64,000 nt of DNA from assembly GCA_964106915.2 (NCBI GenBank), contig OZ066918.1, one strand, 5' to 3'. Under the pieces are notes generated by a model, which was given only the letters and a program-made list of their open reading frames with translations, searched no databases and was not told the DNA's origin. Shown piece after piece: positions 1,594 through 59,510 of the stretch (positions are counted from its first letter, which is position 1; the number at the start of each line of letters is the position of its first letter). This stretch comes from Podarcis gaigeae (lineage: Eukaryota). A program made the position numbers and the translations under genes.

Positions 1594-1937
1594 GTAAAGG
1601 TAAAGGGACCCCCAACCATTAGGTCCAGTCGTGACCGACTCTGGGGTTGCGGTGCTCATCTCGCTTTACTGGCCAAGGGAGCCGGCGTACAGCTTCCGGT
1701 CATGTGGCCAGCATGACTAAGCTGCTTCTGGTGAACCAGAGCAACGCACATAAACGCCGTTTACCTTCCCACCAGAGCGGTACCTATTTATCTACTTGCA
1801 CTTTGATGTGCTTTCGAACTGCTAGGTTGGCAGGAGCAGGGACCGAGCAATGGGAGCTCACCCCGTTGCGGGGATTCGAACCGCTGACCTTCTGATCGGC
1901 AAGTCCTAGGTTTAACCCACAGCACCACCCGCGTCTC
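1594..1937 (-). mobile_element. Sauria SINE (Squam1)
   Basis: (ACCTTT)n tail, B-box GGTTCGAATCC on the minus strand; homologous to 11412-11781. Confidence 0.92.
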
Positions 1938-2245: not shown

Positions 2246-3296
2246 ATCAATAGCATGGTTTCTGCCTGGGCTTCTAGAGGGAAGCGAGGTGCAGGTGGGG
2301 CTCATACGCCTGGGAAGGTAGCCCATCTAGGACAGGGGCGCCAACTTATAAAAAATATTGGGGGGGCCCATACCGGGGTCCTCGCCACAAGATCCTGGCT
2401 GCGGGGCGCAATTCGGGAGGGCTCGGCTGGCCGGGCCCAGGCCCGCGGGGCTCCTCCGCGCTCCCCTCCCCCGGCCGGGCGGCGCCTGCAAAGGCTGCGG
2501 GTTCCGCAGCACCTCCGTCTCTCTTTCCACTGGTAGCGAGAGCGGGTGGGAGGAGGCCACCCGGGAGCCGGAACCGGGCACCAAATAAGGAGAGCGGGGC
2601 GGGCCTGGATACTGGCCTTGTTTGGCGCTTCCCCTCGGCCGGCGGCCCAGCCAAACCCGCGGCAGCGGCGAGGCGATGCCCGCGCAGGGGGGCGCCCACC
2701 CCTCGGCCCCCGCCCGGCGCTGCCGCCCCAGCACCTGCCCGCTCCTCCCAAGGGGCCTCCTCTCCCTCCCGCCTCTTCGCAGCAGTAATATAATTTTCTT
2801 AAATTATTGGGGGGGCAGAGCCCCCCCAAACGAATTTTTGAGGGGGCTCGGGCCCCCTCAGGCCCCATGGAGTCGGCGCCTATGATCTAGGAGAAGAAAC
2901 ACTGCCTTGCAGGACATCTTTGGGAGAAGAAAGGGCTAAGGAGTAAACCCGACACAAATCCAGAGTCCCTAAGACGGTTGGATGGTGCCTTGTACGTCCC
3001 CTCTCAGCAACTCCTGCAGCCAAGCTGGTGCCAAACGTCTTGCTCTCCTTTCCTTTGGACCACATCAGGGTGGTCTTCTCATCTGGACAACCCAGGACCT
3101 CCTTACACACTGCCCAGTTTTGCACCCTGGGGAGGTCATAAACAATGTGGGAGGCAGCAGTTACAAGCGACTAGTCTCTGCAGCCACAGCTGATATTGAG
3201 ATTCTCCAGTAGTTTGACTTCACCCCTAGAGGTGCACTCCATTGTCTCTCAAGACAGACAAATGCCAAGGATGATGACAACAATGACAATAACAAT
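2246..3296 (+). mobile_element. Non-autonomous retroelement (RTE-related, tentative) interrupted by the hAT at 2333-2884
   Basis: Sequence is continuous across the hAT TSD (GCCCATCTAGGA|GAAG) and ends in a (CAA)-like simple-repeat tail. Family assignment is from recollection only. Confidence 0.45.
2333..2884. mobile_element. Non-autonomous hAT element (Tip100-like termini) with a GC-rich 400-bp interior
   Basis: Imperfect TIRs CAGGGGCGCCAACT / AGTCGGCGCCTATG and perfect 8-bp TSD ATCTAGGA (2325-2332, 2885-2892). Termini are shared with 19947-21873. Confidence 0.9.
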
Positions 3297-8524: not shown

Positions 8525-8768
8525 ATAAGACGCACCAGACCACAAGACGCACCTAGTTTTTGGAGGAGGAAAACAAGAAAAAATATATTCTGAATCTCAG
8601 AAGCCAGAACAATAAGAGGGATCGCTGCACAGTGAAAGCAGCAATCCCTCTTGCTGTTTTGGCTTCTGGGATAGCTGCGCAGCCTGTATTCACTCCATAA
8701 GATGCACACACATTTCCCCTTACTTTTTAGGAGGGAAAAGTGAGTCTTATAGATCAAAAAATACAGTA
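8525..8768. mobile_element. Tc2-like MITE (left TIR eroded), related termini to 32332-33542, with an internal hairpin
   Basis: ATAAGACGCAC repeats, right end TCTTATAGATCAAAAAATACAG-TA, and an internal inverted repeat CAGAAGCCAGAACA...TGTTTTGGCTTCTG. Confidence 0.7.
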
Positions 8769-11411
8769 GTTCAATTTGGCTGTGTACTTTTTCATGTGTT
8801 TTGTTTATTGTTTGCAACTACTTTTGTTATGTTTGTAATTTTGTAAATCTTCTCCTGTTGTAAGGTGCCTTGAGCACAGTTTTATCAATGGGAAGGCAGC
8901 ATTGGCAATGAGCCACAGCCCTACTCAGCCACGAAGCTCACGTGGCCCAATACAGCATGAGTCACACACCCCAGCACAGCTCATGCCTTCTGTTAATAGA
9001 ATGACTTTATTTGTTACATGCATAAATAGTTTTAGTTCACTACTAAGGGCAAAAGTCCTCTCATGGTGTCTTTTATCTGTAAGTCAGTGTTTAAATCAAC
9101 ACCAGTGCAATTAAATGAAAAAGACCAGCCCAGTTGCTGCTAGACCAAAACAAACAGCTCAGTCTCAAAATAATCCACCATACCATGAAACATTGAAAAA
9201 TATATGCTAATCTGACATCCCTATTAATGATTTGGAAGAGCAAGAAGCAGCGGAGAACGGAGCAAATATTTAAATGCAGTACATTTTACAAATAACGTGA
9301 GTTGTGCAGCATGGTGTCAGCCATAGAAAAAGCTGAATATGGATCTGAAAGAGGCAACAGACATTTGGATACAGTATGGTGACTCCTCTAAGCCCAGACA
9401 TCTCTCCACCTTCAACTGCAACAGCACAGCAGGATTCTAAAAGCACCTTTTCAAAACATTTTCACTTTGTTAACTAATGCTGCCACTGGATTTTCAGTTC
9501 TGTTTTATCAATATTATTGTGTTTTCACTCCCCTTAGTCTTATCATTTTAATTTGTATGCTGCTTTGAGACGGATTGTGACAGGCAGCAAATAAACATAT
9601 ATCACATTTTGGGGAAGGCAATTCAAGAGATGAGTGTTGTTTGGAGAGGCTGGCAGGCAAAGTGTTAAGCACCCTTCCTGCTCAAAATTTCAGCTTCCTT
9701 GTGCAGCTTTTCATTAAAAAGAAATGCTTCATTACACACATTTGCATGTAATGGTTAGTTTGCCCCAGAGTTCAGGAATTACAGTGTTAGAAGTGAGGAT
9801 CACCACCAGCCGTTCTATATGGATGTATGCTTTGTCACAGGACACCGCAGAGCAGGTGTGCAGGTGTGGACTTGTCACATATGATGAGCAAGCGTCTCTC
9901 TCTTTCACTGCCCATGTTAGGAGGCCCTGTGTGGCAGCAACAGCATCCCTCAGTGTGTACACACAAAACCAAACGTGTTTCTATACACATGCATGGAGAA
10001 AGAGTGATAGCAGTTCAGTGGGGCTGGGGGATTTTGTTAGAAGTATGTTTGTGGACCCACAACCTCACCCCACCCCAAAGCTGCCTGTTAACTGCCTGAT
10101 TCGAAGCCTGTGCTGGGGGGGGGAGGTGGGGGCTGGCAGGAGAAGTAAGAGCTGCTTTGGGCCTTTTGAAAGCTTCGTATTGGGGGTGCCAGATGGCGAG
10201 GCAATGATTTCACCCAGTCCAATCATGGTGGGAATGTTTAAGATCAGGCATTAAAGATGATGCAATGTGGTAGATTTTACTGCTTCTTTTTATTGCCCCA
10301 TTAATTAACAGGATAATGTTTGCAGGAGGGGAATATGAGGCAATAAACTGCTTTTGTGGGTGATTAAACATTTCAATGAAACTAAGACATTTGATGGTGC
10401 AAAAGCAGTTTATTGAAAAGCACATTTCCACTACGTATTAAACAAAGACCAGATTGCAAAGGCGAGGTGGGACGAGGAGGACCAAATTCTGAACCACAGG
10501 CAGTTTCAGCATTTTCCAGACAAGCAATAAGGGAACAGATTATTTTATATAGGAATTTACTATCAATCACATGGTATATGCAAGTAATGGGAGACGGGAA
10601 GGATCCCATAAGCACTCCATAAACAAATCAGAGTGAATGCTTAATAAAGCCCGGACACGGTCAAACTGCTGTGTAGGCTTTGTGCCAGCAATCAGGATGA
10701 ACGCTCAATAAACAGATCTAGGGGAGCCCAAAGATAAGAAGAAACCACTGTTTAGATAATTTAAAGTTACAGAACGAAATGGAAAGCTGCCATCAACTTT
10801 AGCTCAATAGGGTCGTCCCCCCCCAATTACATACAGTACATTGAAATTTACATTTTAGAGTTGCAACCAGAATTTAATGTCTAAATTTGAAAGTCACCCT
10901 GCAAATCCAGGAGGTGTGTTGGGGCAGCTGTGGCTCCGCAATGGTGAAGATGAGACAATTCTGCATCTGGTCATGGCATTTTCTTCTTCATTTCAACACC
11001 ACACATTCTAGAGTAGATTAGTGGCACCGTAACTATGTTCTCACTTGCCATTAGATGTGCTTTAAAGTGTGGGCAAATAACAAGCAATGAGTATTCAGGA
11101 TAAGTTTTCAGTGCTTTATATTACATATGACTTCATAGATGCCAGGAAAAGTTCTAATGGAAATAAATGCATTCAATCTTGGAGAAAAAAGAGCCTTGGT
11201 CCATATACAAGTACGTATAAAGAATAATAAATTTCAGATATATCTTTAAAAAATCTGTAATTATTTCAGGAATTAAATACTGCTGCTTCAAGTCTTCTAT
11301 TTTTACTACCTATATTAATTACAACTCTTTATCCAAATATATTATATTAAACTTTACGATTGCAATACTAAGTTTATTTATGCCAACATTTTATACAGTG
11401 CTAATACTGTT

Positions 11412-11781
11412 GGGGACGCGGGTGGCGCTGTGGGTAAAACCTCAGTGCCTAGGACTTGCCGATCGCATGGTCGGCGGTTCGAATCCCCGCGGCGGGGTGA
11501 GCTCCCGTCGTTCGGTCCCAGCTCCTGCCCACCTAGCAGTTTGAAAGCACCCCTAAGTGCAAGTAGATAAATAGGTACCGCTTTATAGCGGGAAGGTAAA
11601 CGGCGTTTCCGTGTGCTGCGCTGGTGCCGGCTCGCCAGAGCAGCTTCGTCACGCTGGTCACGTGACCCGGAAGTGTCTTCGGACAGCGCTGGCCCCCGGC
11701 CTCTTAAGTGAGATGGGCGCACAACCCTAGAGTCAGACACGACTGGCCCGTATGGGCAGGGGTACCTTTACCTTTACCTTT
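11412..11781 (+). mobile_element. Full-length young Sauria SINE (Squam1)
   Basis: A-box GGTGGCGCTGTGG, B-box GGTTCGAATCC, (ACCTTT)n tail, TSD TAATACTGT (11402-11410, 11781-11789), CpGs retained. Confidence 0.95.
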
Positions 11782-14640
11782 AATACTGTAGTATTGATAT
11801 GGCATCCATAATTAATCTACATCCTACTATGCTAGCATTTTTTTGGGGGGGGGAAATACCTCAATTCAATTTTTTCTTTTGGAAATCTCACCAAATATAT
11901 CTAAATTTGGTGTTATCTTGCCCATTTTGGTGCATGGCTGAGCAAAAGAGGTAAGCAGAGCCTTTCTTTGGTAGGGTAAAAGATTTCCTCCTCTTTCAAA
12001 TATTCTGATTATTTCTACTTTTAGTTAAGCATTTTTATTTATTTACTTGATTACGGGGGAGGACAGCTGCCCCCCTCCCCCCGGCTACGCCCAGGAGCCC
12101 AACCCTACACTTAGTTACACAGATGAAAGTCCAGCTGTGGTCAGCAGGCTACAAGCTCAGACACTGTAAAGACTAACGTATTTATCGTGACAAGCTTTTA
12201 TGAACTCTGTTCAGAACTCTTGATGAACCCATGACTATTTCTTGCATTTGCTTGGCCTTTAGGCCCGACTGTGTAAAAGATTGTTTCTTACCCCCCCCCA
12301 TCTCCCCCCCCCCTAGTCTGCCCCCATCTTTCTAGATCATGTCATGCTTTTTACCAGTGGTTGGTGGGTGGAGGCACACGATTCCCTTTCATTTCTACTG
12401 CAACATACTACTCAGGATACTCTTCAGGAATCACATTTCTGTCTATCCTATTTGAACTCACAACACAAAAAACCCCACTACCATTTTGGTTCTAGTCTTT
12501 TCTAACTGCAGACACAGGTTTTGAAAAGACTGCCTTTTGTTTTCCTTCAGAGAATAGTAAAAGTGTGTGATGTTTTTTCTTGCTGGAAGCATTTGAGGAA
12601 CAGACAACTCTTGTGAACAATTTAAAAGCTGCAACAGTTCAACTGAACTGCAATATTTAACCCATTTTATTCTCTGCCTATCACCAACATTAAAGGCAAA
12701 GCTTTGATTCCACATTTTATGATTCCATTTGTTATTGTCTTAAGCCTGATTGCAGCCTGTGTGTTTCCAGCAGATTATCTCTGGTAATCACTTTCTTTTC
12801 TGCAATGGAAATGATCTGAAAATTGCTCTTTGATAACCAGGGATGGGTTCATTGAGGCCACGATGCACAAAAGCAAGAATTGTGCAATAATCATTTGTAA
12901 AGAGAAACCGTTATCAAAGGAACTGTGGGGGACACCTCCAGGACTTCTCGGGCGAGTTGTTGAAATTTGAAACATATATTTCTCACACAGGAATTTTGCT
13001 GTAAACTCTTCTGAATAATGCATGAGACTTGATTTAACGTCACAGTTAATCCTGGCATTTGCCGCCAGAAAATAGTACTCTTAGGGTACATCAGATTGGG
13101 GGTAGGGGAGAGGAGACGGGAGCAGCGCAGAACTAAAATCTGTTAAGATAGTTGTGGCGGAATTCCAAGCAGCTTGATAGGAAGATGCTTTTTGTTGGTA
13201 AGAACCTTCCTTAATGAAGCACAATAACCAGCTGCTCCCATAACAGGCAGGAGAAAAGGGCACTCAAGTCTGGCTTTGCCGCTGACTGCACCAACTCAAG
13301 AAGGTTCTGCTGTCTCCCTGACTAGAGACTGTGTATAAAAAACACAATTGTCACATTCACATATTTTTAAGAGTGACTATTGATGCTTTGCAGCCGCGGA
13401 GTACTTTTCGGAGTTCAAAGCACCTATACCTTCACAACAGTCTTGCATTTGTTTATTGTGCCGCAACACATCCATTGGTGCAGCACTTCTGGCCACAATA
13501 CAGTATGTATTATTATTTTCATGATGCAGGTTGGGAACTAAGCGTAACAGACACGGCCTTGCCTGAGCTCTGCGTTTGTGGTTGAAAAGAGACTTCCCCT
13601 GGTGTATCCTCACTTCCTTCTTCCATGCGTCTCCCCCCAATATGCTCTAGTTGGTTGGGGGACCCCCTGGAGCAGATTGGGGGGGCATGTTGGAGTGCAA
13701 GGGGAAGCAGACATTCCACCGTGTGAGCAGAAATTGGCTCAGGTGTTGTTGGATATCACACATGGAGCTTAAATGCACTAGGGACTTTCTGCTACCCCAG
13801 AGTAATGCTGCTGCTTTGATTATGTTGAATTTAATTTATTCACATTTTGATCCTGATCTATTCCTTTGCTGTCTGCTACGTATTAATTCATGAAAGCTTT
13901 CTTAGTTAAGCAAACATGAATATTTTTTCATTATAGTCATTCTTAATTTATGAAAGGAATTGCTTTTTTATCTATTCAGAAGAAGTTTAACTGGAATGTT
14001 TGCTAGCTAGTTAATGTGGATATACATTTACGGAATGTATCTAATCAGCTGAGTATATTTATGTGTTGTTTTGCTGCATCTACATGTTGATTTGTTTTAC
14101 TCTTTCCATGAGTTGCTTTGAGTATATTTATGGGAAAGCAGCAAATAAAGACACAAATATAATTAATAGCAAACAGGCACCTGATTCCTGCACTCCTTTG
14201 CTGAAATCAGAAGCTCTTGGCCACACGGAAGACCCTGCAGCAGATGTCTCCTATGCCAGCATTACTCGGGTTTTGATCAATGAGTGCAAGCTATAGTATG
14301 GGCTTTTCACATTACCCGATGGCATGGGAAAGAATCACATTGCAAATTGCTTTTTCCACCTTACAAACATGAGCAATGGGCCCTAAATTACCCCTAAAGA
14401 TGTAACATGTGAAGTGGCCCTGTATTTACAGCTGATGCAGTAAAAGGATGAAGTTCATCTTAATCAGAAGTTCTACTTATTCCTGCTCCCACCTCCTACA
14501 TGGGATCAAATTGGAGCAATTCTCAAAGAACAAATCTAATGTCTTCTTGTAAAAGATTTAGAAATGGTAGGAAAATCCAATATATCACTGTAACTTTGCA
14601 AACACAAAACGCAAACCCTCACAAAGATTAATGGGTGGTC

Positions 14641-15990
14641 AAAGTATATCAATCAATTTTTTATTGCAGTCCTAAGACTCACCAATAGATTCCAGTACAT
14701 AAAAAGACATAAAACATACTTACTATTTTGACATCAGATAAAACTAAGCTTCTTTCAGACCTTTAACTAATACAAAGTGCTCTCTGATCCTGTCCGCCTT
14801 AGAATGAAACTTGGCAATTGCCAAAGATACACTGGGAAACCTATCCTCTAATAGGTACCTAACATAAAATTGTGCAGGTCTTCCTGGAAGGTTTGCAATT
14901 AAAGAAATTACCTTTTGTTGTCGGACCTGCTTGTATAGTCTGCAGGACAGTAGAATATGCTGCATAGATTCTACTTCCTGAATTGTACAGGGGCATAATC
15001 TAGCAGAGTAAGGAAATACCCGCAAATCTGCCTTGGAGCATTTTAGAAGGAAACACATTCAGTCTGGCCTTGGTAAAAAGTCTGCGGTAGTTGACCACTG
15101 TCAAGTTCCCGACATACTGTAAACTCACAGCTCTTGGTGAGCAGGATGAGTATGAACAGGTCTGCAGATCACCATAGGCAACGGCCCACAGTCTTTGCTT
15201 TAGTGATTTAAAGGCTATGTTGAAGCCCAAGTGTTCAAGAAGAAATGGGGACAGCCCAATTGAGGGAGCTTTTTGGGCGTTGCACTTGGACCAGAAACTA
15301 ACATACTCATTCTGAGCTAGATGTTGTAGTACTCCTGTCCCCAATATGAAAACACTGACTTTAAGCCAGTATCTGAAGGCTGCCCACCAGGCCCAGGTCA
15401 GTAGAGGGCATTCCCAAGTTTCCAAGAAATGACTGAGGTAGGTACATCTGGGGATCTGGAGGACAGCCCTCAAGAATTTAGCCTGGAGATCATGCAACTC
15501 AGATGTTAATCCTCCACTCCAGATATTAGAGGCATATAGTAATTCGGCAGCTGTCCTGAATATTTTGATGGCAGGTGGAATATACTGGCCCCCTTTAGTA
15601 AAGTGGCTGATTGACTAACTTGTGCTTTCTGAGGGCTGCAGATCTATGGGTGATCCATGTCGTTATGTGATGGAATGTCAGCCCCAGGTATTGGATGCTT
15701 CTAATCTGATTGAGGGCGTGCTCATCTAGTGACCATTTGCAGTGGGATAGATTCTTTTCAAAAACCCAAATTTTAGATTTCCCAAAGGTAATTTTTAGGC
15801 CATTCTGTACACAATAAGGCATGAACCTCTTTAGTTGATAATTTAGACCTGGTCTGGAACATGAGAGAATGGCTGCGTTGTCAGCATACAATAATAATGG
15901 AGTCCTCCAGACCCCAAGTTTGGGCGGGTGGCCAAGTGGCTCTAGGTCATTTATAAATATGGTAAACAATGAGGGTGCCAGGATACATTT
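14641..15990 (-). mobile_element. Degenerate non-LTR LINE (RTE-X-like), 3' RT and CCHC region
   Basis: Fragments FINDL..HPPKL..LLYADN, YLGLTF and CPC..ESMQHILLSC with frameshifts; homologous to 55805-56980. Confidence 0.85.
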
Positions 15991-17004: not shown

Positions 17005-19946
17005 CTGGAAAGAGGCAACACATGCAGATCATTAAGCACAAAACACACAGAGGACCAAACTGCTAACTATTCAAAACTGGAGGCACAGCTGCCTCCACTT
17101 GAAAGATTTCATTCTACACTCTGCATCCCTGCCAAGAAGTCTGCCCAGCCTCTGAACTGGCTTGCAATAAAATAAGATAAACAATTGATGCAGCATTTGT
17201 TTACTAGCAGGTACAGTGGAACAGGTATACATAACTCTAACAGTTATCTGATTCCAACTCTGAACAGCAAAGTAGAGATGGAGTTAGGGGAGTTTGACCG
17301 GTTTGCCTGCCCATGAGGGCAAATGCAGGGAGCACCACAACAATGACAAACAATGGAAGGCGGGGCGGGGGGCACTGAATTTTGGGGTTGCCCGGGATGC
17401 TGCTGAAATTTGGAAACCCAAAGCACCACAGCCAGGATACGAACTCCGCAGATTAAGTCAAACCCATTTCCAGCCCTGCCCACCTGCCCCAGGCTAGTCC
17501 CAAGAAGGTTGGCTCATGGAGCCCAAAAGGTTCCTTAGCCCTAGACTATGGGGATAGAGAGCAGGGTTGGCCCATGTGAGCCAGGTCCATGGGTGTGTAC
17601 AGCAGGCAGAATCCACATTCACAAGGGTGTAAGTTGCTGAAATGCCAAGGAGCTCTTTGGGTTCTCAAGAGAGAAGAGACATGTGGTGTTATGTGAGACA
17701 CCAGGGGAAGGCTCTTTCAGAAGCATCAAGCTGCCTCATCCCTTCTCCTCCTTGGGGGCCAGGGATGGTGGCCAGAGCCAGGCCCTCAGCTTTCTCCTAT
17801 CCCAGGGGTTCTCAAAGTGGGGGTCCATGGACCACGAGTGGCCTGCTAGCTTTATTCAGGTAGTCTGCAGTAGCGATCCCCATGGATGGGGGTCCCTGGG
17901 ATAACTCAGTCAGTAAAGATTCTTAATCTCAGGGTCATGGACCGAGCAAGAGGACTAGATGACTTTCGTGGTAGCTTCCAACTCTACCATTCCATGCTTC
18001 TATGCTGGTTATACTTTTATGATGTCTGTTAAAAATTTAGTAAATTGTGGTGGTAGTGGATGTTTACTTTTCAGTGTGCCTGCCAATAAAATATATTCAT
18101 TACAAGCCAGATGTGCTTGTACTGATCTCATTTGTAGCCATGCTCACCAAGGTAAGAATGAGATTTATTAGTAGGCTCTAGGACTTGTGGGATGGGAGTT
18201 GTCTTTGGAGCAAGAGACACTCCTAAGTAGGTGAAATCCTTTTCTGAACTGAGACAATGTCCAACGTTTCCATCATATATATCAGGAACATTCCGCCCCC
18301 CCACCACCTGAGTCCACTGCAGGGGACTTGCAGCTTTTCATTTCAAACAGCTGTGCAAGAGAGGCTCCCTCTCTCTCAAGCCTTCCCACATGAGTACCTT
18401 CACAGCGTCCCTTTTGCCTGCCTCAGACTTCCCCAAGAGCCCTGCTTAAGCAATAATGCCCACGGTGCTGGTGTGGTGGCGTCCATACCCATCCTTTGGC
18501 TTGAAATGTCTAACTTTATTGACCACCAATGTTGCTGCCACCAGCTGAACTGCACAAAGCTGCCTGATGTTTATGTCAACTGAAAATCTTCAGCTGCCCT
18601 CCCAGGATGTTCACACTACCTTGACCTTTCCAAATGTAAAGTGTTCCCTCAGACAGTGAAGATGAAAAAAACAAGGATCAGCAAAAACTGCAGATCTGAG
18701 CACCAAAATCAACTCAGGTCTGCACTTTACATAATAAGGGACACTCAAAAATAATTCTATGTTCTGTTATCCAATTACCAGAGGCATCACAGAGTACTTT
18801 TGCACACCTCATTAACACCTTGAGCGTTGAGAAGTGTGTTGAAACGGCATGTCTATTACTGGAACAAAAAGTCACTTAGATCCATAATGCTGAGGAGAGA
18901 TATTTGTAGCTAAAATAATAGCAAATGAGGTGAGGATTTTCATAATAGCTTCTGGAGATTATATTAAGCAATGACAGATGAAGGTATCTGATGCATTCTG
19001 TAGTACTGTGTAAGCAGAAGTGGCTCTATTATAAGGGAAACTGAGGCAGAATTAAAGAATCACCTTGCTGCGTCACTGAGGCAACTTAGTCTAGTTTTAT
19101 ATATGTTTTATATATGTTGTGAGCCACCCAGAGTGGCTGGGGAAACCCAGCCAGATGGGCAAGGTATAAATAATAAAATTATTATTAGTAGTAACCCATC
19201 TGCAACATGGTCCAGGCACTTCTGCTTTTTAAAAAGGTGCAGCCTCTCTGGGCTCAACAAAAGCAGAGGCCATTACAGAATTAGGACTGGTGTTCAATGT
19301 GATGAAGGAGGCAGGTTTCAGTTATCATTACAGGCAACAGAGTGAGTGATGGATATTTTTGATCTATGGGGCACCAATACGTTTTCCGGAGCAGCTCTCA
19401 CTTGGAATGAATGGTGGCTCTTTTCAGTGAGGCCTGAGCATTAGAGATTCCAGACGGACTGTGCTCCAGCTTATTAGCCTTCCCCCCAATAACAACAGAG
19501 AGACAAACCCCTCAGAGCAATGTTAATATTATATCACATGCAGCTGAATAAATGTGTATAGAAATGGTGTGCATGCTCTGGGCAACTGTGATGAACTGGA
19601 GCTTCACAGCCACGTGTATTTGCAGCAAAACTGTCCCTTGCTATGATCAACATGTGGATGTCATTCTTTTTTGAATGTGAAAAGACTTCCCACGCTGGAA
19701 AAAGTGGTCAGAGTGCAGCAGATGTAAAAGATAAGCACACATACTTCAATAGGTGCCACTGAAACTGGATGGTTGCAGGTCTCCAGACTGCTGTTATTTT
19801 GTTATTTGGCTAAATGTGGCTTTGAAGCTGGATTAAATACACATTATAGTAGTGGTCACAAGGAGGTTGCTGAAAATGATAGTCGCACAGTGAGTTAGTT
19901 CTCCATCCACCACTAGCAAGGGACTTGCTGTGCAGTTGGCCACTGT

Positions 19947-21873
19947 CAGGGGCGCCGACTTATAAAAAATATTGGGGGGGCCCACACCGGGGTCCTGCCC
20001 CGGGAAGTTTTCTAAATTTTAGATGAAAATTAGTGAGTTTTAAAGTTTTTTAAAAGTATTTTAGAGTCATATGATCAACATTAGAACCCCGAAAACTCGA
20101 CTCTCTATAACTCCACACTCCGGGAAACTCGACAAGCCTGAAACACTTTTTGGCTTTGAAAAAAGAAGCAAAACAAAAACACGCACGGTATTTTCGTAAA
20201 AAGCTAATTTAATTTACAGTAACAATTATGCTTATAGACTATTACAGAGCAGTGAATATATAGCTCTGAAAAGACTGAAATGATATTTAAATAAATCCTA
20301 AACTATCATTAAAAGAATAAAACATAAAATATTGCTGTCGCACAGTAATAGCACTTTGATTAATAAGTGAAATAGCTAATTTAAGCTTACTTTGAATAAG
20401 GCTGAGGGTTCATTAAATAAATATAATATCTCAAAGTTAATGCTTTAATACAGTTAATAAAGTTAATACAGTATGCCTAATACTGTATGTAAATACTGTA
20501 ATACTGTATGTAAATAACGGGCTTTAATTGGGTCTTACACCCTAAAAATATTTAAGTATTTGAAAATAACTAATACAGTACTATAGTAATATAGAAATAC
20601 AGTACTAAACTAGTACTAATATTTCAAAACTGAAAATTTAACATTCTGTATGTATTTAATTCTCTATTTTATAAAGATTTTTAATATCTGACAGTGAGTT
20701 TGGAGTAGCCCAATGCAAAAATCCTGAGGATCCATGTGGATCCATGCTTTGTAACCACGTTTTTGCACCACTGTGACCCTAGGCAACAGTGGGTGCGTGA
20801 TTTTTTTGGTGCAAGATGTAGCCATGGACATGCTATGTGATCTGATGGTGAATTTGGGGTGACCCAATGCAAAGATCCTGAGGATCCATGTGGATCCGTG
20901 CTTTGTAACCACATTTTTGCACCACTGTGACCCTAGGCAACAGTGGGTGCATGATTTTTTTGGTGCAAGATGTAGCCATGGACATGCTATGTGATCTGAT
21001 GGTGAATTTGGAGTAGCCCAATGCAAAAATCCTGAGGATCCATGTGGATGCGTGCTTTGTAACCACGTTTTTGCACCACTGTGACCCTAGGCAACAGTGG
21101 GTGCGTGATTTTTTTGGTGCAAGATGTAGCCATGGACATGCTATGTGATCTGATGGTGAATTTGGGGTGACCCAATGCAAAGATCCTGAGGATCCATGTG
21201 GATCCGTGCTTTGTCACCACGTTTTAAATGGGGAGGGAAGGAAAAACACAGAAGGGACAAGAAGCACAAGAGGGGTGTGCGGAGAAGCAGCTGGCTAAGA
21301 ATGCAGGGGAGGAGTTTAACGGGGTGGGGGGGAGGAAAGGAAGGCAAAAGTCCCCCCCCCCCAAGCCAGCCCTCTCTCTCTCTCTCCCACCTGCATCCCT
21401 AGAGCACGGAGAGGAGGAGGTGGTGGGCTGGAGCCTGCACGCAGTGTGACTAGGAAAGAATTAGAAGGAAGGACTCGATCCTTTCCTTAACCCTCTGCTT
21501 GCCAGGAGGGCAGGGGATTCCCTGCTCTTTGTTGAGTTTGAGCAAACGCAGCAACAGAAGCCGGTGGGCAGTAAGACCCTGAGGCAGAATGCAGGAAAGC
21601 AGCAGCTTCCGCCTTCCCTCCGCCCGACCGCCCGATCTGATTTTTGCCTGATTTTTGCTCCTGCGCTCCGGCGAGTCAGCTCCAGGGACCACACATTCGC
21701 TCAATAACACGCACAGACATTTACCCTTACTTTTTAGGAGAAAAAAATCTGTGTGTTATAGAGCGAAATTTACAGTAATAATTTTGTTACATTATTGGGG
21801 GGGGCGGAGCCCCCCCAAACGAATTTTTGAGGGGGCTCGGGCCCCCTCAGGCCCCATGGAGTCGGCGCCTATG
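19947..21873. mobile_element. Non-autonomous hAT element with the same termini as 2333-2884 and a different interior
   Basis: TIRs CAGGGGCGCCGACT / AGTCGGCGCCTATG and perfect TSD GCCACTGT (19939-19946, 21874-21881). About 50 bp (left) and 100 bp (right) are nearly identical to the first copy. Confidence 0.9.
20693..21225. repeat. 154-bp tandem repeat (about 3.5 units) inside the hAT element
   Basis: Recurring ATGTGATCTGATGGTGAATTTG...GATCCATGTGGAT. The identical ORF ends at 20833, 20987 and 21141 are 154 bp apart. Confidence 0.95.
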
Positions 21874-22505
21874 GCCACTGTCCCATGGGAAGACAGCACA
21901 CCCCTTTTGCCACCTGAAGCTTAGGTTTTAGGAGGAAATATCTTGCCACAGAGACACTCTTCCTTGTGGCATCCTTGCAGCAACTTTAACATGCATTCCA
22001 GATCTCAGTCCAGATCTTCTGAACGTACTTAACAGTAGAGAATAAGTAAAGGCAAGGCAAGGTACACCTGGCCATACTTTGCATTGTATAATTTAGGCTG
22101 AGGCATCCTTTGACAGACATTATAGTTTTGTTTTCACAGTGTAAAAAAGTAATATTTATGTTCACACGTTTAAGGATCTAGCCTACAAATCAAGGGAAAG
22201 CTTTAAGAAGTAAATAAGAGAGGCTTGTAAATGCTTCTTTTAAGCGGTTCAGTGGATTATTTGATTTTATTTGGATTTACATGGCACTATGGGTTATTTA
22301 TGAAAGGGGTTTATACTAAAGTTATCATTGGGGTCATTAGTCTGCTCTGACTTTTATTATTACTGGAGACAGCAGCAGTTTGTAACTGCTGTTTTGGCAA
22401 TGAATGTTTCACAGCCTCCTTGCAATTTTTAGAATTAAAACCAGTTGTTACACAACAGCTTCAGAATTAAACAGCAGCAATCATGAGGATTTAATTCCTA
22501 CTCAC

Positions 22506-25101: not shown

Positions 25102-25350
25102 GGTAAAGGTAAAGGTAAAGGTACCCCTGCCCGTACGGGCCAGTCTTGCCAGACTCTGGGGTTGTGCGCCCATCTCACTCAAGAGGCCAGGGGCCAGCGC
25201 TGTCCGGAGACACTTCCGGGTCACGTGGCCAGCGTGACATCGCTGCTCTGGCGAGCCAGAGCCGCACACGGAAACGCCGTTTACCTTCCCGCTGGTAAGC
25301 GGTCCCTATTTATCTACTTGCACCCAGAGGTGCTTTCGAACTGCTAGGTT
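25102..25350 (-). mobile_element. 5'-truncated Sauria SINE
   Basis: (AAAGGT)n tail on the plus strand; body homologous to 11412-11781. Confidence 0.9.
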
Positions 25351-31821: not shown

Positions 31822-32331
31822 CTAGTGGAGAAAAGTACACTTAATATTCAAGAATGATGTTGAAATCACTCATGTTTCTCAAGAAAAACTTACAAAGATG
31901 TATAACAAGTTCTAGAAGTTCAATCACATTGAAATCTTAATTTCAGACTGTAATCTCTTCACAGAATATTAAAACATAAAATATCAACAAAATGTACCAC
32001 GTGCTATTCTCAGTTCCCCACTTGCTGGAGTACACTTCATCTTATCCGATAGCTGACATCACTTGGTATTCTTCTGTATTGCACCAATATGGAATACCTT
32101 AACATTGCTGTTTATCTTCAGGTAGGGTTTTTATTTTTTGTTTAAAGAACATATTTTAAGGAATATTTGTGAGACACACCTTAGATTAGGGCTGGCATAT
32201 TTCAAAAGTGAAAATCCCTGGACACCAAAGTTGTTGAGCTTTTTTTGATTTTAATCTCAACAAAAAATGAAACTTCTGACATGGGTTCAGACACTGTCCA
32301 GACACTGTTTCTGATGGCCGAATCCGAATTA

Positions 32332-33542
32332 CCGTATTTTTCGCTCTATAACACGCACCTGACCATAACACGCACATCGTTTTTAGAGGAGGAAAACAAG
32401 GGAAAAAACATTCTGAATGAAACAGTGGATGTATAATTTTTGTGCTTCATGCTGTGGCCACAGACATGTGATCTGATGGTGAATTTGGGGTGACCCAATG
32501 CAAAAATCCTGAGAATCCCTGTGGATCCATGCTTTGTAACCACGTTTTTGCACCATTGCAGCCCCAGGCAACAGTGGGTGTGTGATTTTTGGGGGGCAGG
32601 CTGTAGCCATGGACATGCTATGTGATCTGATGGGGAATTTGGGGTGACCTAATGCAAAGATCCTGAGGATCCATGTAGATCCATGCTTTTTAACCACGTT
32701 TTTGCACCATTGCAGCCCCAGGCAACAGTGGGTGTGTGATTTTTGGGGGGCAGGCTGTAGCCATGGACATGCTATGTGATCTGATGGTGAATTTGGGGTG
32801 ACCTAATGCAAAAATCCTGAGAATCCCTGTGGATCCATGCTTTGTAACCACGTTTTTGCACCATTGCAGCCCCAGGCAACAGTGGGTGTGTGATTTTTGG
32901 GGGGCAGGCTGTAGCCATGGACATGCTATGTGATCTGATGGTGAATTTGGGCTGACCCAATGCAAAGATCCTGAGGATCCATGTGGATCCATGCTTTTTA
33001 ACCACATTTTAAGTGGGGAGGGAAGGAAAAACACAGAAGGGACAAGGAGCAGGAGAGGGGTGTGCAGAGAAGCAGCTGGCTAAGAATGCAGGAGAGGGGT
33101 ATAACGGGAGGGAGGAAAGGAAGGCAAAAGTTTTCCCTCACCTACCCACCCAAGCCAGCCACCTCTTGCGCGCTCTCTCTCTCCCTCTCTCCCTCCTGCA
33201 TGTTTTCAGCAGCACCGGAGCACAGAGACGACACTCTGCTTTCCCCTCTGCTTGCCTGGAGGGGAGGGGCTTTCCCTGCTCTTTGTTCCGTTTGAGGAAA
33301 CACAGCAAGGAAACAGAGGAGGGTGGGCAGTAAGACCCTGAGGCAGAATGCAGGAAAGCAGCCGCTTCCTCTTTTCAGGTTTCCCTTCTCCGAGATGCGC
33401 GATTTGATTTTTGCCTGATTTTATTTGCCTCCCCTCGCGCCATTTGGCTCCAGGGACCACACAATCGCTCAATAACACGCACAGACATTTCCCCTTCCTT
33501 TTTAGGAGAAAAAATCTGCGTGTTATAGAGGGGAAAATACGG
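32332..33542. mobile_element. Tc1/mariner-superfamily (Tc2/pogo-like) MITE carrying a 154-bp tandem array
   Basis: TIRs CCGTATTTTTCGCTCTATAACACGCA / TGCGTGTTATAGAGGGGAAAATACGG, with TA on both sides (32330-31, 33543-44). Confidence 0.88.
32466..33010. repeat. 154-bp tandem repeat (about 3.5 units), homologous to 20693-21225
   Basis: ATGTGATCTG recurs at 32466, 32620, 32774 and 32928. Confidence 0.95.
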
Positions 33543-33675
33543 TATGTCTGGGAAATTCTGTACGTATGGTAACCCTACCTTAGATGAGATTAACCACCTA
33601 AAGCATGCAAAAGTACAGCCATATTGGGTCTATATGGATTCAAGGCCTTCAGGTCTAAATAATGTTTTTGTTTTA

Positions 33676-34865: not shown

Positions 34866-37657
34866 CAGTGTTTCCCAACCTTTTTTGGGCAAAGGCACAC
34901 TTGTTTCATGAAAAAAATCTCGAGGCACACCACCATTAGAAAATGTTTAAAAAATTAACTCTGTGCCTATATTGACTATATATAAAGTAACTCTCTTTAA
35001 TAGGAATCAAATAAACACAAAGAAAGTATTTTATAATTACTTTATTATGAAATAGTAAGTAAACAGAAATATGAAAAATTATAAAATACTTTATTCAGTG
35101 CGCAACCTGGGCCTGTTTGGCTGAACACAAAGCTGATATTCTGGCTGGAATCGAAGAAAGACACACACGTAGCTCTTCGTCAACAGCTCTCAGTCTCTCT
35201 CTGTATTTAGTTTTTATAGCAATCATGCTTGAAAAGCTCAACTCACAGAGATATGTAGTGGAAAATGGGAGCAATGTCAAAATAGCTTTGTTTGCCAGAA
35301 GGGGGAACTCCTTGGCAGTTTCCAACCAAAAACTGTCCAAAGGTAGATCAGCAAATCTTAGCTTGAAACCACGATTTTGTCTCAGTTCAGTTAGTTCCTC
35401 CTGCTCCTGTAAAGTCATGTCCTTTCCACCAACTGATGCTGAGCTATAAGGGTCCCTAACCCAGTCAAGGCATTCAGTGGAGACTGAAGAGAAATAAAAT
35501 GACAACTTCCCCTCGAGAGTTTTAAAATGTTTACCTATTATCTCACACAGTGCAGCAGTGTGAACACCTTGCCATTGCTTGGTGAGTGTGAACATTTCAA
35601 GATTGCCACTTTCCACGTGTTGATGCCAGAGTTGCACCTTTGAACGGAATCCATTTATTTTATCTGTACTTGTAAGCAGGTTTTCATTTCGGCCTTGCAT
35701 TCGTGTGTTCAGTTCATTCAGATGATGAAATATATCTGCCAGGTATGCCAGCCTTGCACACCACTCATCACTTGCAAGCAGCTTTGCGTAATCTGACCTC
35801 TCATTTGTCAGAAACACTTTAAGTTCCTCCCGCAGCTCATACACACGAACCAAGACCTTGCCACGCGACAACCACCGGACCTCCATATGAAACAGCAAGG
35901 TTTTATGCTTCGCTCCCATCTCCTCACACAAAGCTGCAAATATGCGACTTTTCACGGGTCGTGACTTTACAAAGTTTACCATGCGCACAACATCATCCAA
36001 CACATGAACTAGGTCTGCTGGTAAAGTCTTGGCTACGAGGGCCTCACGGTGCAAAAAACAATGCGTAACAATCACATCTGGATTTCTTTCCTTCACTCTG
36101 CTTACAAAGCCTTTGGTGTGTCCGACCATGGCTGCAGCTCCATCGGTGCAGACACTTGTGCAGTTTTCCCACTTAAGTCCTCCTTGTTCAAGGTATTCTG
36201 ATGTGACCCGAAAAATTTCTTCTCCTGTTGCTTTTTCTGGCAATGCCTTGCAGAAAAAGAAGTTTTCTCTAATTGCATCACCATCAACAAAACGCACATT
36301 GGCCAAGAGTTGAGCATGTCCACTGATATCAGTAGACTCGTCAAGTTGTAATGCAAATTTCTCACTGCTATGGATCTTTTCCAAAACCACACTTTCAATG
36401 TCTGCAGACATGTCATTAATACGTCTGGAAATTGTGTTGTTTGAGAGAGGGACTTTGGCTATTTCCTTAGCTGCTTCAGGTCCGAGCATCTCCTCTACAA
36501 TAGCTTTGTAGGCGGGAAGTATTAATGTCTCTGCCACAGTGTGCGACTTTTTTGACTTGGCTATAAGTTCAGCAACGTGATAGCTAGCTTTAAGACCTCT
36601 TTCATTTACCTTTGAGGTTTGTCTCATGAAAATTGCCTGTTTCTCCGTGTTTTCACGCAGGCGAACAAAATAGTCCGCATTCTTGTTTTGAAGCGAAGGG
36701 TGTTTCGTTTGGAGATGGCGTTTAAGTTTGCTTGGGACCATAGCACTGTTAGCTAGCTTTTCACCACACACCACACACAGTGGAGTTGGTTGGTTTGCAT
36801 CTCCGGTGAAAGTAAATCCAAATGAAATATAGCTTTCGCTATATTGCCTTGTGCCAGAGGATTTGCTTGAGCTAACCATCTTTGCTTTCTTTTCATGCCC
36901 ACTCATACTTGGACTCTCATCTGGCTCCAAATTTTGTTCAGAGTCCAGTTCTTTTCTTTTCAAAAACTTTTCCATCACTGCAGTATCCGGCCATCCAATT
37001 GCCACTGACCATCGGATACAGACCCCTTTTTTTTACAGCACAGCTCGCACAAATGTACACGGAACACCCTTTTCGAATTAAAACACACAGTCTCACGAGA
37101 GCAAGGAGCAGCGATTTTATATTTTACGAAAAGAAGTCGCTAGTCCTCATGGTGACAGGGTGGAAAATATTTAAAAGCAGAACCACCTTGAGGAAGGTGG
37201 AGCCATATCACATCCCGGCAGGAGGCCTAAATTGGTGGAACGCTCAGGCCCCGCCTATTCAAAGAGGACTATTAATTTGGAGAGCTGCTATCTTCCAAAC
37301 TGTGAGACGATGAGGCAAAAGGGGAGCCCTGAATGGAACTTTGCATTTTTGTCTCAACGCCGGTCTCGCGCTGCCGCTTCCCGCGCTCTCAAGGACCCGG
37401 GAGGAGGAAGGCGTGAAGGGAATCCCGAAGGCGCGAAAACCTCGCGCATGCGCAGGCCTTCCGCCTGCGACAGCCCAGTAGGCCGGCCGAAGCGAGCGGT
37501 GATGGGATGTGGGAGGGAGCTCGCTCGCCGCCCCGTGTGTGCTCGCCGCCGCCGCCCCGCCTCTCGCCGCCCGACTCGCCCGCCTCCCTCCCACGGCACA
37601 CCAGGCAACGTCTCACGGCACACTAGTGTGCCGCGGAACACCGGTTGGGAAACACTG
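34866..37657 (-). mobile_element. Full-length autonomous hAT transposon, Buster/Charlie group
   Basis: Perfect 15-bp TIRs CAGTGTTTCCCAACC (34866-34880, 37643-37657), 8-bp TSD CTCTAGAC (34858-34865, 37658-37665) with the central TA typical of Buster, GGCACAC subterminal repeats, and an internal transposase ORF. Confidence 0.97.
35095..36975 (-). CDS. hAT (Buster/ZBED5-like) transposase, 626 aa from the first ATG (MEKFLKRK...)
   Basis: BED zinc finger CVVC...[10 protein letters not shown]; catalytic [16 protein letters not shown] and CELSFS (DDE); CxxH (HCFLH); RW motif (VRWLSRG). No stops. The ORF-track start at 37005 is a GTG. Confidence 0.95.
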
Positions 37658-56980: not shown

Positions 56981-58729
56981 ATTTGCTCAGGTAACATATA
57001 ATTATTTTCTCAGTGCCAAGCTAAATGATAAATATGTGTATGCACTCAGATGTCTTGTTTTTACTTTGAAAATAATAGCCCGGGGATAACCCATACTGGG
57101 ACCATGGCAGGCAAGAAGGAAGGGTTTAACCTTCTTTACCTATAGCACAGTAAAAGCACCCCCCTGAGCTGCTGCTTTTCCTGGGAGAGAAGCAGGTACA
57201 ACACTCCTATGCTATATTCAGCTATATCTCACCTAAAGCTGAACTGAGTAGGCTGTTCAGTGTTTATAGGCCTTGAGGTTGTTGCAGGAGGACAAAGTAT
57301 TACCTTTCAAAGTGTCCTTCTTCCTCTTATTCTCAACCCCTTTTTGTCTGCCTAGAATCCTCCTTGACAGGCTCTCCATTTAGGATCACCACCTACATGG
57401 TTCTCCCAAGCAACTCCAAATACCAGTTCACACTGCATGTGATTCCTCATGTGTTTTGTTTACCATATCACACAAGCAGCACCTGGCCTCCTGGGATGTA
57501 TGTTTCTTGTGTGGTAAGGAAATCGTGACATCAGAGGAACTAGAAGCCTTTCAGTCTACTGAACTTGTACACAGCAAACACTGAGGTAGTAACAGTGGTG
57601 GACTTGGGGCTTTAAAATTTCAGCAGTGCCCTGTGCAATGCTAAAATTTGGCGCATGCCCTACCTCTTGCCTTCAATTACTCACCACTGTTGCAGTGTTA
57701 CCTGTGGCACCTCTCAGCTTGGCGCCCAGTGTGGGCAATCGGGTCTCACTCCCCTAAATCCACCTCTGGTGGTAATAATCAGAGTGGTTTGGGCAAGAAT
57801 GATGGGTCTTTTGCACAGATAAGAATTTCAGCAGTCATGCATCTAGTGGAGTCATGCATCATCATGGAGGTCTGATAAACACCACCTCTGTTGAATTTTT
57901 CTCATTCACACCACCAGTACGTGTATAGGAAGCCCTGTCCTCCTTTCCATCCAGGGCCTCTAAAATGGACACGAATCTGATTATCAAAGGATCCAACTTC
58001 CCAGTAAGTATGTATAGGTTTACAACCTTACAGCACAAACTGAACATATTTAGACAGAAATCTTGCAGGTCAATGGGACTTATTTGCAAGTAAGTCATGT
58101 TGAACTCAGTGGGACTTGCTTCTAAGTAAACTTGCATTACAGACAAATTCAGACACTGAGGTAAACACCACTTTGCAGTTTACCACAACCAAAGAATAAA
58201 TTTGCAGTCTTACAGCCCTGATTAGTAGTTACCTGGAAGTGTAGTGCCATTAACTTTGATGCACTTTGCTTCTGAGTACCTTGAGGGCTGCTTATTCTGA
58301 AATAACTCCCAAGTAAGTTGAACAGGGCTTATTCTGAAGCAGAGGCCTACAGGATGACAGCCTCATGGGCTAGTCATATAAATGTTAACTAAGCAGTAAG
58401 ACCCATTGACTTTAGTGTGACATTCTCCCATTTAAAGCTCAGGTTATCCTGAAGGAGATTCCAGAGGGTCAGATGTTTGCCAGAAGGAATGGAGAGCAGT
58501 CTGTAGCAGCCCTGGTTGACTTGAGAAGAGACACACGGGCATCAACTGGGTTTAAGTTAGTCATAACTCTTATTTTATTTCAATGGTTCTACTCTAAGCA
58601 GTCAGCCTCCTTGGAGGTGCAATGGCCATCTGTCATGGATGATCTAGTTGAGATTCCTACCTTGAAGTGGGTTGGACTAGTAGTGGGTTCCAATTCCACG
58701 ATTCTGTGGTTCTATAGGAAAGTCCCTAA

Positions 58730-59510
58730 GGAAGAGCGGAGCGGATTCCCCTCGCTCGTGTGCGCAGCAATTCCCAGCGCGCATCCCGGGTTCAGGAAAG
58801 CCTCCCCAATATTATTGGAGGACGGGCTCAACCCAAACGCACAGATTCCTTCGAAATTGTAGCGCTGCTGCTCCCAAGACGTGGGTGGCAAAGGCGGCGA
58901 CCCCCCGCAAAGAACCACCACCGCCTCTCAGGTCCCGAAGCCTACGGAGGCCTACAGAGGAGTAGGCGGCCCCGTGCCCTCAGTGGGACTTCCTCCCCGG
59001 CCTCTGGGGACCTCCGTCCAGGCAGGGCGGCCGCGGGGGAGGCTCCGCTCGCCCACCTGAGCAGGAGGAGGAGGAGGAGGAGGGGAGCGGGGCGCTGGCC
59101 CACGTCCCTCCCTCGCTCCTCTCCCCGCTTTGGGGGGCGCGGCAGAGGCGACCCTCCCTGCTCACCTGGCGTCTCGGGCTCCCCTTCCTCTGGCGCTGCT
59201 CCTTCCGCCTCTCCCGGGCTGCAGGAACCGGCTGGGACGGGCCTGGTCCCTCGGGCAGGAGGAAGCAGCCTCGCCGCCCCCGGCCGGGAAAGGCCCTTCT
59301 GGGGAGGAGCCCCGGCAGCGCCGAAAGAAAGGGGGCTCTTCTTCGCACCTCAGACTCCTCACGGGGGGGGGAGCCCCTGAGGGGCCACAGCCTCCTGGCC
59401 CCCCTCGCCCCCAAACCCTGTCCGTGCCCTGGAGAGACGGCAAGGGACTCGCCACCAGGCGCATCTTGCTAGAAGCTGCTAGGGGCGCTTCCTGCGCGCT
59501 CCTTTGGGGA
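58730..59510. promoter_or_regulatory. CpG island / ARHGAP8 promoter
   Basis: Strongly GC- and CpG-rich against an AT-rich background, upstream of the first coding exon, and contains a minus-strand splice donor. Confidence 0.8.
59166..59300 (-). other. ARHGAP8: Probable ARHGAP8 non-coding exon 1 (5' boundary approximate)
   Basis: Consensus donor CCAG|GTGAGC at 59166/59165 inside the CpG island, on the gene's strand. Confidence 0.6.

What the first reader, a model, noticed from the sequence alone, without database searches (positions are those of the whole stretch)
2333..2884. Pack-type hAT element whose interior looks like a captured host promoter (serum response element module)
Seen in sequence: a TIR- and TSD-bounded 552-bp hAT element whose 400-bp interior (2383-2782) is an undecayed CpG island. 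It contains CCGGAA (2568-2573), a perfect CArG box CCAAATAAGG (2581-2590), a GC box GGGGCGGG (2596-2603) and a second CArG-like CCTTGTTTGG (2616-2625). The sister element at 19947-21873 has the same ends but none of this interior. Established knowledge: an Ets site next to a CArG box is the TCF/SRF serum response element of immediate-early and actin-cytoskeleton genes, and Pack-MULEs in plants capture host gene 5' regions. Inference: this lizard hAT family transduplicated a real gene promoter and may spread signal-responsive enhancers. SRF acts downstream of RhoA, and this copy lies about 14 kb past the stop codon of a RhoGAP gene, though that may be coincidence.
Basis: partly seen in the sequence, partly recalled or inferred. 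Interest (0 to 1): 0.8.

Follow-up and report, generated by a model that had tools for sequence, protein, structure and literature searches.

The report
Small lizard hAT transposon carrying CpG-island DNA
A 552-base cut-and-paste (hAT-type) transposon in a wall-lizard genome carries 400 bases of promoter-like, CpG-rich DNA that its neighbouring sister copy lacks; this kind of cargo-carrying transposon is already known in vertebrates, and where the cargo came from could not be traced here.

Summary
The element at 2333-2884 has perfect 8-bp target-site duplications and imperfect terminal inverted repeats. It shares only 50 bp (5') and about 102 bp (3') with the element at 19947-21873. Its 400-bp interior is 76% G+C with CpG observed/expected 0.77, and it holds the stated CCGGAA, CArG, GC-box and CArG-like motifs.

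The interpretation (a captured host gene promoter) could be neither proven nor refuted. The interior has no second copy in the window, no Rfam or Pfam match and no protein relative.

Indirect evidence favours acquired foreign DNA. The two interiors are unrelated and diverge at the same sharp junctions. The sister copy carries a fragment of an unrelated TA-flanked MITE. The sister continues a GC hairpin that this copy interrupts.

A serious rival remains. An intact Buster-type hAT in the same window has its own CpG island about 57 bp inside its end, so the interior could be the unknown parent's own promoter.

The scan has noted this before on other DNA of the same genome (Podarcis): two unchecked notes describe 523- and 568-bp hAT elements with ETS+CArG+GC-box cargo, and other hAT captures have been followed up. 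Verdict: a new member of a known kind (Pack-TIR/Pack-hAT), of moderate interest.

The parts
2325..2332 (.). Left target-site duplication ATCTAGGA of element e1
   Evidence: Identical to 2885-2892.
2333..2382 (+). 5' end of e1, shared with the sister copy. It holds the TIR (2333-2346, CAGGGGCGCCAACT) and the subterminal motif AAAATATTGGGGGGGC (2352-2367).
   Evidence: 96% identical to 19947-19996. The motif is repeated in the 3' end at 2801-2816.
2383..2782 (.). Cargo: 400 bp of CpG-island-grade DNA of unidentified origin
   Evidence: G+C 76%, 44 CpG, observed/expected 0.77. No other copy in the window. No similarity to the element's own ends beyond shuffles. No Rfam, Pfam or protein match.
2568..2625 (.). 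Motif cluster: CCGGAA (2568-2573), CArG CCAAATAAGG (2581-2590), GC box GGGGCGGG (2596-2603) and CArG-like CCTTGTTTGG (2616-2625)
   Evidence: Positions and shuffle frequencies. These are motif matches only; binding was not tested.
2783..2884 (+). 3' end of e1, shared with the sister copy. It has two GC-run hairpins (about 2807-2829 and 2839-2860) and the terminal repeat (2871-2884).
   Evidence: 94% identical to 21773-21873. DNA fold -26.7 kcal/mol, z = -4.65, with 0 of 200 shuffles folding as well.
2885..2892 (.). Right target-site duplication ATCTAGGA of e1
19947..21873 (+). Sister element e2 (1927 bp): same ends and same orientation, unrelated interior, TSD GCCACTGT at 19939-19946 and 21874-21881
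20686..21779 (+). Inside e2: the right-hand part of an unrelated TA-flanked MITE with 154-bp satellite repeats. It ends exactly at the MITE terminus, next to the TA that starts the shared hAT 3' end.
   Evidence: 81% identical over 1.1 kb to 32471-33544. The full MITE copy at about 32330-33546 is flanked by TA.
19987..20003 (+). Hairpin CCGGGG-TCCTG-CCCCGG in e2, straddling the point where e1 and e2 diverge
   Evidence: Predicted in the minimum-energy fold of e2's 5' end and absent from e1. This is weak evidence: the z-score of the whole 70 nt is only -1.3.

Best explanation
e1 is a young non-autonomous hAT-superfamily element that moved by cut-and-paste, as its 8-bp TSD shows. It consists of a minimal family backbone (a 50-bp 5' end and a 102-bp hairpin-rich 3' end) around 400 bp of DNA foreign to that backbone.

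The cargo is a fragment of an unmethylated CpG island carrying an ETS-CArG-GC-box cluster. I infer that it replaced the previous interior in one event of template switching, either during repair of an excision gap or during replication (the Pack-TIR, gap-filling/FoSTeST type of capture). The chimeric element was then mobilised in trans by a related transposase.

The donor is unidentified. A host gene's promoter or 5' region is the most likely source, and a promoter of another transposon is the second.

Shown: the element's structure, the TSDs, the sharp junctions, the unrelated cargos, and the CpG-island and motif content. Inferred: the foreign origin, the capture mechanism, multicopy status and any regulatory activity.
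For: - Structure and TSDs.
- e1 and e2 share only the outer 50 bp and about 102 bp, then diverge abruptly on both sides.
- The family backbone demonstrably carries foreign DNA. The interior of e2 contains 1.1 kb of an unrelated TA-flanked MITE that also exists as a free copy at 32330-33546.
- Just past the shared 50 bp, e2 completes a 6-bp GC hairpin of the same style as the two strong hairpins of the 3' end. e1 diverges inside it, which suggests that 2382/2383 is a true breakpoint.
- The cargo has no similarity to the element's own ends.
- The cargo is of CpG-island grade, and its CArG+ETS pairing is rare under composition-preserving shuffles.
- Published precedent (PMC8277862): 370 Pack-TIRs in 100 animal genomes, 208 of them hAT. 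The multicopy cases tend to capture high-GC DNA, for example a 291-bp 5'UTR captured by hAT-N8_XT in frog.
- Unchecked leads from this scan: hAT captures of 5' gene regions in the same Podarcis genome, and two other 523- and 568-bp hAT elements described with ETS+CArG+GC-box cargo on other chromosomes.
Against: - No donor locus was found, because none could be searched for.
- Only two family copies were available, so the native interior of the family is unknown. Either e1 or e2, or neither, could be collinear with the parent.
- The hairpin argument is weak: a 6-bp stem, and the fold z-score is not significant.
- The 3' junction coincides with the MITE insertion site in e2. It therefore says nothing about where e1's native sequence ends.
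- An intact Buster-type hAT in the same window has a CpG island (observed/expected about 1.0) starting about 57 bp inside its transposase-proximal end. This is the same layout as e1.
- The cargo shows no exon, start-codon or protein signal.
- 92 kb of other Podarcis DNA held no copy of the family, so nothing could be learned from further copies.
Confidence: 0.5

Rival explanations
1. e1 is an ordinary internal-deletion derivative. The 400-bp CpG island is the autonomous parent transposon's own promoter and 5' UTR, kept next to the 5' end when the transposase gene was deleted. Nothing was captured from the host.
For: The intact Buster-type hAT at 34867-37657 (626-codon ORF, TSD CTCTAGAC) has its own CpG island at about 37340-37600, roughly 57 bp inside the end nearest the transposase start. 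e1 has the same layout, with a 50-bp end followed by a CpG island. Deletion derivatives are the commonest kind of non-autonomous element (established knowledge). The cargo shows no host-gene signal.
Against: e2 diverges from e1 only 50 bp in, and it continues a family-style hairpin that e1 interrupts. The Buster element in the window is a different family and shares no sequence with e1. No parent element was seen.
Confidence: 0.27
2. The cargo was captured, but from another repeat or from non-promoter GC-rich DNA, for example the CpG-rich 5' region of a different transposon or retroelement, or an rDNA spacer. The motif cluster would then have no host-gene history.
For: The only cargo whose origin could be traced in this family is a fragment of another transposon: e2's MITE piece. 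No exon or protein signal in the cargo. No RNA family matched, but that search does not cover spacers.
Against: The cargo has no second copy and no repeat relative anywhere in the 64-kb window or in 92 kb of other Podarcis DNA. The ETS-CArG-GC-box arrangement is typical of RNA polymerase II promoters (established knowledge) and is unlikely by composition.
Confidence: 0.12
3. Beyond being captured, the cargo acts as a working SRF/TCF serum-response module. This hAT subfamily spreads it through the genome, and it influences the neighbouring RhoGAP gene.
For: A perfect CArG lies 7 bp from a CCGGAA core, followed by a GC box and a second near-CArG. The decamer's reverse complement, CCTTATTTGG, occurs 16 times in a paper on a synthetic radio-responsive promoter (PMC4601673, seen only in the search listing; I did not read the paper). 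CpGs are largely retained. Two unchecked notes report the same cargo elsewhere.
Against: CpG retention is expected for any young insertion, and e1's termini already show two CpG-to-CpA changes relative to e2. The element lies about 14 kb beyond the 3' end of the RhoGAP gene, and nothing but proximity links them.
Confidence: 0.08

Closest known systems
Pack-TIR / Pack-hAT elements of animals (Tan et al. 2021, Nat Commun 12:4280, PMC8277862), e.g. Pack-hAT-N8_XT of the western clawed frog, which carries 291 bp of the CAPSL 5'UTR
   Same: A non-autonomous hAT backbone with TIRs and 8-bp TSDs encloses a few hundred bp of GC-rich, 5'-region-like DNA unrelated to the transposon. It is probably multicopy. 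The proposed mechanism is template switching during gap repair or replication.
   Different: A parental (donor) locus defines a Pack-TIR, and none has been identified here. The cargo shows no exon. The species (a lacertid lizard) does not appear in the main text of that survey ('lizard' and 'Anolis' each occur 0 times).
Pack-MULEs and Pack-TYPE elements of plants (PMC8903248)
   Same: TIR elements that pick up and amplify gene fragments, with a bias towards GC-rich 5' regions.
   Different: A different superfamily (Mutator, CACTA and others) and kingdom. Plant elements usually carry exons with recognisable coding similarity, and this cargo has none.
Ordinary internal-deletion derivatives of hAT elements (Ds-like elements and hAT MITEs)
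   Same: Short ends sufficient for trans-mobilisation, an 8-bp TSD, subterminal repeated motifs and hairpins.
   Different: In a simple deletion derivative the interior is collinear with the parent. Here two copies with identical ends have unrelated interiors, one of which is partly a different transposon.
SRF/TCF serum response elements of immediate-early gene promoters (c-fos and EGR1 type)
   Same: A CC(A/T)6GG box with an adjacent Ets GGAA core and nearby GC boxes, inside a CpG island.
   Different: Only one perfect CArG. There is no evidence of binding, inducibility or conservation. The resemblance rests on motifs alone.

Membership tests
hAT superfamily, non-autonomous element | 8-bp target-site duplication | tested here: met
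   ATCTAGGA on both sides of e1 and GCCACTGT on both sides of e2.
hAT superfamily, non-autonomous element | Short terminal inverted repeats with a YARNG-type terminus | tested here: inconclusive
   The 5' end, CAGGG, fits. The reverse complement of the 3' end, CATAG, departs at one position. The TIR matches at 11 of 14 positions.
hAT superfamily, non-autonomous element | TSD consensus of a hAT clade (Ac type nTnnnnAn, or Buster type nnnTAnnn) | tested here: inconclusive
   e1's ATCTAGGA fits the Buster-type central TA. e2's GCCACTGT fits neither. The consensus patterns come from my own knowledge (Arensburger et al. 2011).
hAT superfamily, non-autonomous element | Mobilised by a hAT transposase from an autonomous relative with matching ends | not testable with these tools
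   No element with these ends and a transposase lies in the window. The Buster hAT at 34867-37657 has different ends.
Pack-TIR / transduplicating element | Bounded by the TIRs and TSD of a known TIR family, and non-autonomous | tested here: met
Pack-TIR / transduplicating element | The interior is homologous to a parental non-transposon locus elsewhere in the genome | not testable with these tools
   There is no DNA search of lizard genomes. Indirect routes gave nothing.
Pack-TIR / transduplicating element | The interior is unrelated to the autonomous element of the family | not testable with these tools
   The parent is unknown. The only facts available are that the interior is unrelated to the sister copy and to the element's own ends.
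Pack-TIR / transduplicating element | Several copies with the same cargo and different TSDs (the multicopy class) | not tested
   Only unchecked first-reader notes of 523- and 568-bp hAT elements with the same motif description on other chromosomes.
CpG island (Gardiner-Garden and Frommer criteria) | At least 200 bp, G+C above 50%, CpG observed/expected above 0.6 | tested here: met
   400 bp, 75.8% G+C, observed/expected 0.77.
SRF/TCF serum response element | A CC(A/T)6GG box with an Ets GGA(A/T) core close by | tested here: met
   CCAAATAAGG at 2581 and CCGGAA at 2568, 7 bp apart.
SRF/TCF serum response element | SRF and TCF binding, and serum or Rho-actin inducibility | not testable with these tools
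   This needs ChIP or a reporter assay.

The most novel reading that the evidence does not exclude
A recently active hAT subfamily in wall lizards captured the SRF/TCF-responsive core of an immediate-early or cytoskeletal gene promoter. It has scattered dozens of still CpG-rich, signal-responsive copies over several chromosomes. That would be a vertebrate case of a DNA transposon distributing a ready-made inducible promoter.
Probability: 0.08. Interest if true: 0.7.

Novelty: new member of a known kind. Interest (0 to 1): 0.35.

Why it matters
Capture and amplification of host 5' regions by cut-and-paste transposons is well documented in plants. In animals it is catalogued, but multicopy cases are rare: four in 100 genomes (PMC8277862). 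If the donor is a host promoter, wall lizards would add a young and probably multicopy vertebrate example. Together with the other hAT captures noted in this genome, that would point to a lineage in which the process is unusually active, which would make it useful for studying how template-switch capture works. It would also allow a test of whether dispersed promoter fragments seed new regulatory elements. If the cargo is instead the parent transposon's own promoter, the element is an ordinary deletion derivative.

Tried and rejected
- Second copy of the cargo in the window: none.
- Cargo derived from the element's own ends: no similarity above shuffles. A similarity I thought I saw by eye was chance.
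- RNA families: none.
- Coding content: six ORFs have no Pfam match. The 188-aa minus-strand ORF has no relative in the word-index protein search.
- Representative search with the plus-strand ORF that holds the only ATG of the cargo: it found nothing for the cargo part. It did find a Podarcis muralis SCAN-box gene model that has exonised the family's 3' end. A second hit, P0001 (4040 aa, matched in 38 short stretches at 34% identity), I took to be low-complexity and did not follow up. No DNA is on record for the SCAN-box model.
- Sampling Podarcis DNA through annotated SCAN genes (P. muralis, P. raffonei, P. lilfordi; 92 kb): no copy of the family.
- The window's Buster transposase as a handle for more loci: not on record.
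- Two metagenome scans, for a cargo 30-mer and a 3'-end 33-mer: no matches, as expected.
- Guessing the donor from the CArG decamer in the literature: the hits included a synthetic radio-responsive promoter paper and an Egr1 paper.
- Last word-index protein search (hAT transposases, to hunt for the parent): left unused, because the chance of hitting the right family was low.

Full report
**What is there**

- It is 552 bp long and flanked by identical 8-bp duplications (ATCTAGGA).
- Its termini are CAGGGGCGCCAACT and, on the other strand, CATAGGCGCCGACT.
- A second element at 19947-21873 lies in the same orientation, 17 kb away. It has its own perfect 8-bp duplication (GCCACTGT) and the same ends.
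- Both terminal patterns occur exactly twice in the 64 kb and never in shuffles.
- The flanks of both elements are unique in the window.

An 8-bp duplication with short, CAG-initiated inverted ends is the signature of the hAT superfamily. Neither element has a transposase.

The 3' end folds into two strong GC-run hairpins (z = -4.65). A motif AAWWTATTGGGGGGGC recurs in the same orientation in both ends. I infer that it is a transposase-binding subterminal repeat.

**The two copies share only their extremities**

BLASTN and alignment show 96% identity over the first 50 bp and 94% over the last ~102 bp, with nothing in between.

The interior of the long copy is partly traceable. Positions 20686-21779 are the right-hand 1.1 kb of an unrelated transposon, a TA-flanked MITE with 154-bp satellite repeats. 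A free, complete copy of that MITE lies at about 32330-33546 (81% identity). In the long copy the fragment ends exactly at the MITE's terminus, next to the TA that begins the shared hAT 3' end. This family's backbone therefore demonstrably carries foreign DNA.

**The 400-bp interior of the short copy**

- G+C is 76%, with 44 CpG and observed/expected 0.77, against 0.29 for the window. It is one of three CpG-island-grade stretches in 64 kb.
- All four motifs sit where stated.
- A perfect CArG box is unlikely in so GC-rich a sequence (0.5% of 20,000 dinucleotide shuffles). A CArG with a CCGGAA core within 25 bp is rarer still (0.01%). These tests are post hoc.
- The interior has no tandem or long internal repeats and no similarity to the element's own ends.
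- It has no second copy in the window.
- It has no Rfam match and no Pfam match in any long frame. All six frames are fairly open, as expected for GC-rich DNA.
- It contains a single ATG on the plus strand (2676) and none on the minus strand (read from the sequence).

**Where did it come from?**

This is the crux, and it could not be settled.

No tool here searches a lizard genome by DNA. 

I then tried indirect routes.
- The 188-aa ORF spanning the cargo has no relative in the word-index protein search.
- The exhaustive representative search with the ORF that contains the only ATG found nothing for the cargo part. It did find a Podarcis muralis SCAN-box gene model (UniRef A0A670HQ04). Residues 18-46 of that model are 90% identical to the translated hAT 3' end.
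- That hit names the species and shows a third copy of the family elsewhere, exonised through a donor site inside the transposon end. Its DNA is not on record.
- I fetched 92 kb of Podarcis DNA around other SCAN genes. None of it holds a copy of the family.
- Two metagenome scans were blank.

**Weighing the readings**

In favour of acquired foreign DNA:
- The interiors are unrelated behind identical breakpoints.
- The sister copy proves that the backbone carries foreign cargo.
- Just past the shared 50 bp, the long copy completes a CCGGGG-TCCTG-CCCCGG hairpin in the style of the 3'-end hairpins. The short copy diverges inside it. This suggests that 2382/2383 is a real breakpoint, but the evidence is weak.
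- Published precedent: 370 Pack-TIRs in 100 animal genomes, 208 of them hAT. The rare multicopy ones tend to carry high-GC DNA such as a 5'UTR. The proposed mechanisms are gap-filling and fork-stalling/template-switching (PMC8277862).

Against:
- The intact Buster-type hAT in this very window (34867-37657; TSD CTCTAGAC; 626-codon ORF) has its own CpG island (observed/expected ~1.0). The island starts about 57 bp inside the end nearest the transposase start. A 50-bp end followed by a CpG island could therefore be simply the unknown parent's promoter.
- The 3' junction coincides with the MITE insertion site in the sister copy, so it is uninformative.
- Only two copies could be compared.

My estimates are:

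| Reading | Probability |
|---|---|
| Cargo captured from elsewhere in the genome | about 0.5 |
| - of which from a host gene 5' region | about 0.35-0.4 |
| Parent transposon's own promoter | about 0.27 |
| Captured from another repeat or from non-promoter GC-rich DNA | about 0.12 |

**Earlier notes of this scan (unchecked leads)**

The same genome has two other first-reader notes, on other chromosomes, of 523- and 568-bp hAT elements with 'ETS + CArG + GC-box' CpG-island cargo. If they are the same subfamily, the element is multicopy and its position near a RhoGAP gene is coincidence. I could not see their sequence.

Follow-up agents also reported hAT elements in Podarcis carrying PKD2 exon 1 and other CpG-island fragments. 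That raises the prior for capture in this genome. It also means the phenomenon is not new to the scan.

**Function**

Nothing beyond motif content supports SRF/TCF responsiveness.
- CpG retention is what any young insertion would show.
- The element's own ends already carry two CpG-to-CpA changes relative to the sister copy. This suggests that it is methylated like other repeats.
- A RhoGAP-domain exon fragment lies at ~16.9 kb on the minus strand, so the stated distance is about right. No evidence links the two.

**Verdict**

I classify the element as a new member of a known kind (vertebrate Pack-hAT-like element), with the ordinary deletion-derivative reading not excluded. A genome-wide BLASTN of the 400 bp would settle the question.

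Noticed in passing
window 2783-2884 (family 3' end); protein P0002 (UniRef A0A670HQ04): A Podarcis muralis SCAN-box gene model has an N-terminal segment (residues 18-46) 90% identical to the translated hAT 3' end. It then continues into a SCAN domain. This implies that another copy of this family has been exonised through a splice donor inside the transposon end (around GA|GTCGG).
   Followed up: partly
window 32330-33546, 20686-21779 and 8525-8770: A TA-flanked Tc1/mariner-like MITE with TIR CCGTATTTTTCGCTCTATAACACGCA carries three to four 154-bp satellite repeats and a GC-rich right half. There is a full copy at 32.3 kb, a right-half fragment inside the long hAT element, and a short relative without the satellite at 8.5 kb.
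   Followed up: partly
window 34867-37657: A structurally intact Buster/Charlie-like hAT: TIR CAGTGTTTCCCAACC, perfect 8-bp TSD CTCTAGAC and a 626-codon ORF on the minus strand. It has a CpG island (observed/expected about 1.0) at about 37340-37600, just inside its right end. The exact product is not on record in the gene-position index.
   Followed up: partly
window 2333-2884 and 19947-21873: Two copies of the same hAT family lie in the same orientation, 17 kb apart, while 92 kb of other Podarcis DNA held none. This is compatible with the local hopping typical of hAT elements, or with chance.
   Followed up: no
window 1594-1910, 11448-11782 (minus strand) and 25104-25350: Three copies of a SINE beginning GTAAAGGTAAAGG (Sauria-SINE-like, from memory), 80-92% alike.
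   Followed up: no
window 15000-15969 (minus strand): ORFs with reverse-transcriptase-like motifs (FTIFINDL..., YADN). They look like a LINE fragment between the RhoGAP gene's last exons and the hAT element.
   Followed up: no
window 58701-59200: A third CpG-island-grade stretch in the window (G+C 65-69%, observed/expected 0.65-0.71), unrelated in sequence to the hAT cargo. It may be a gene's 5' end.
   Followed up: no
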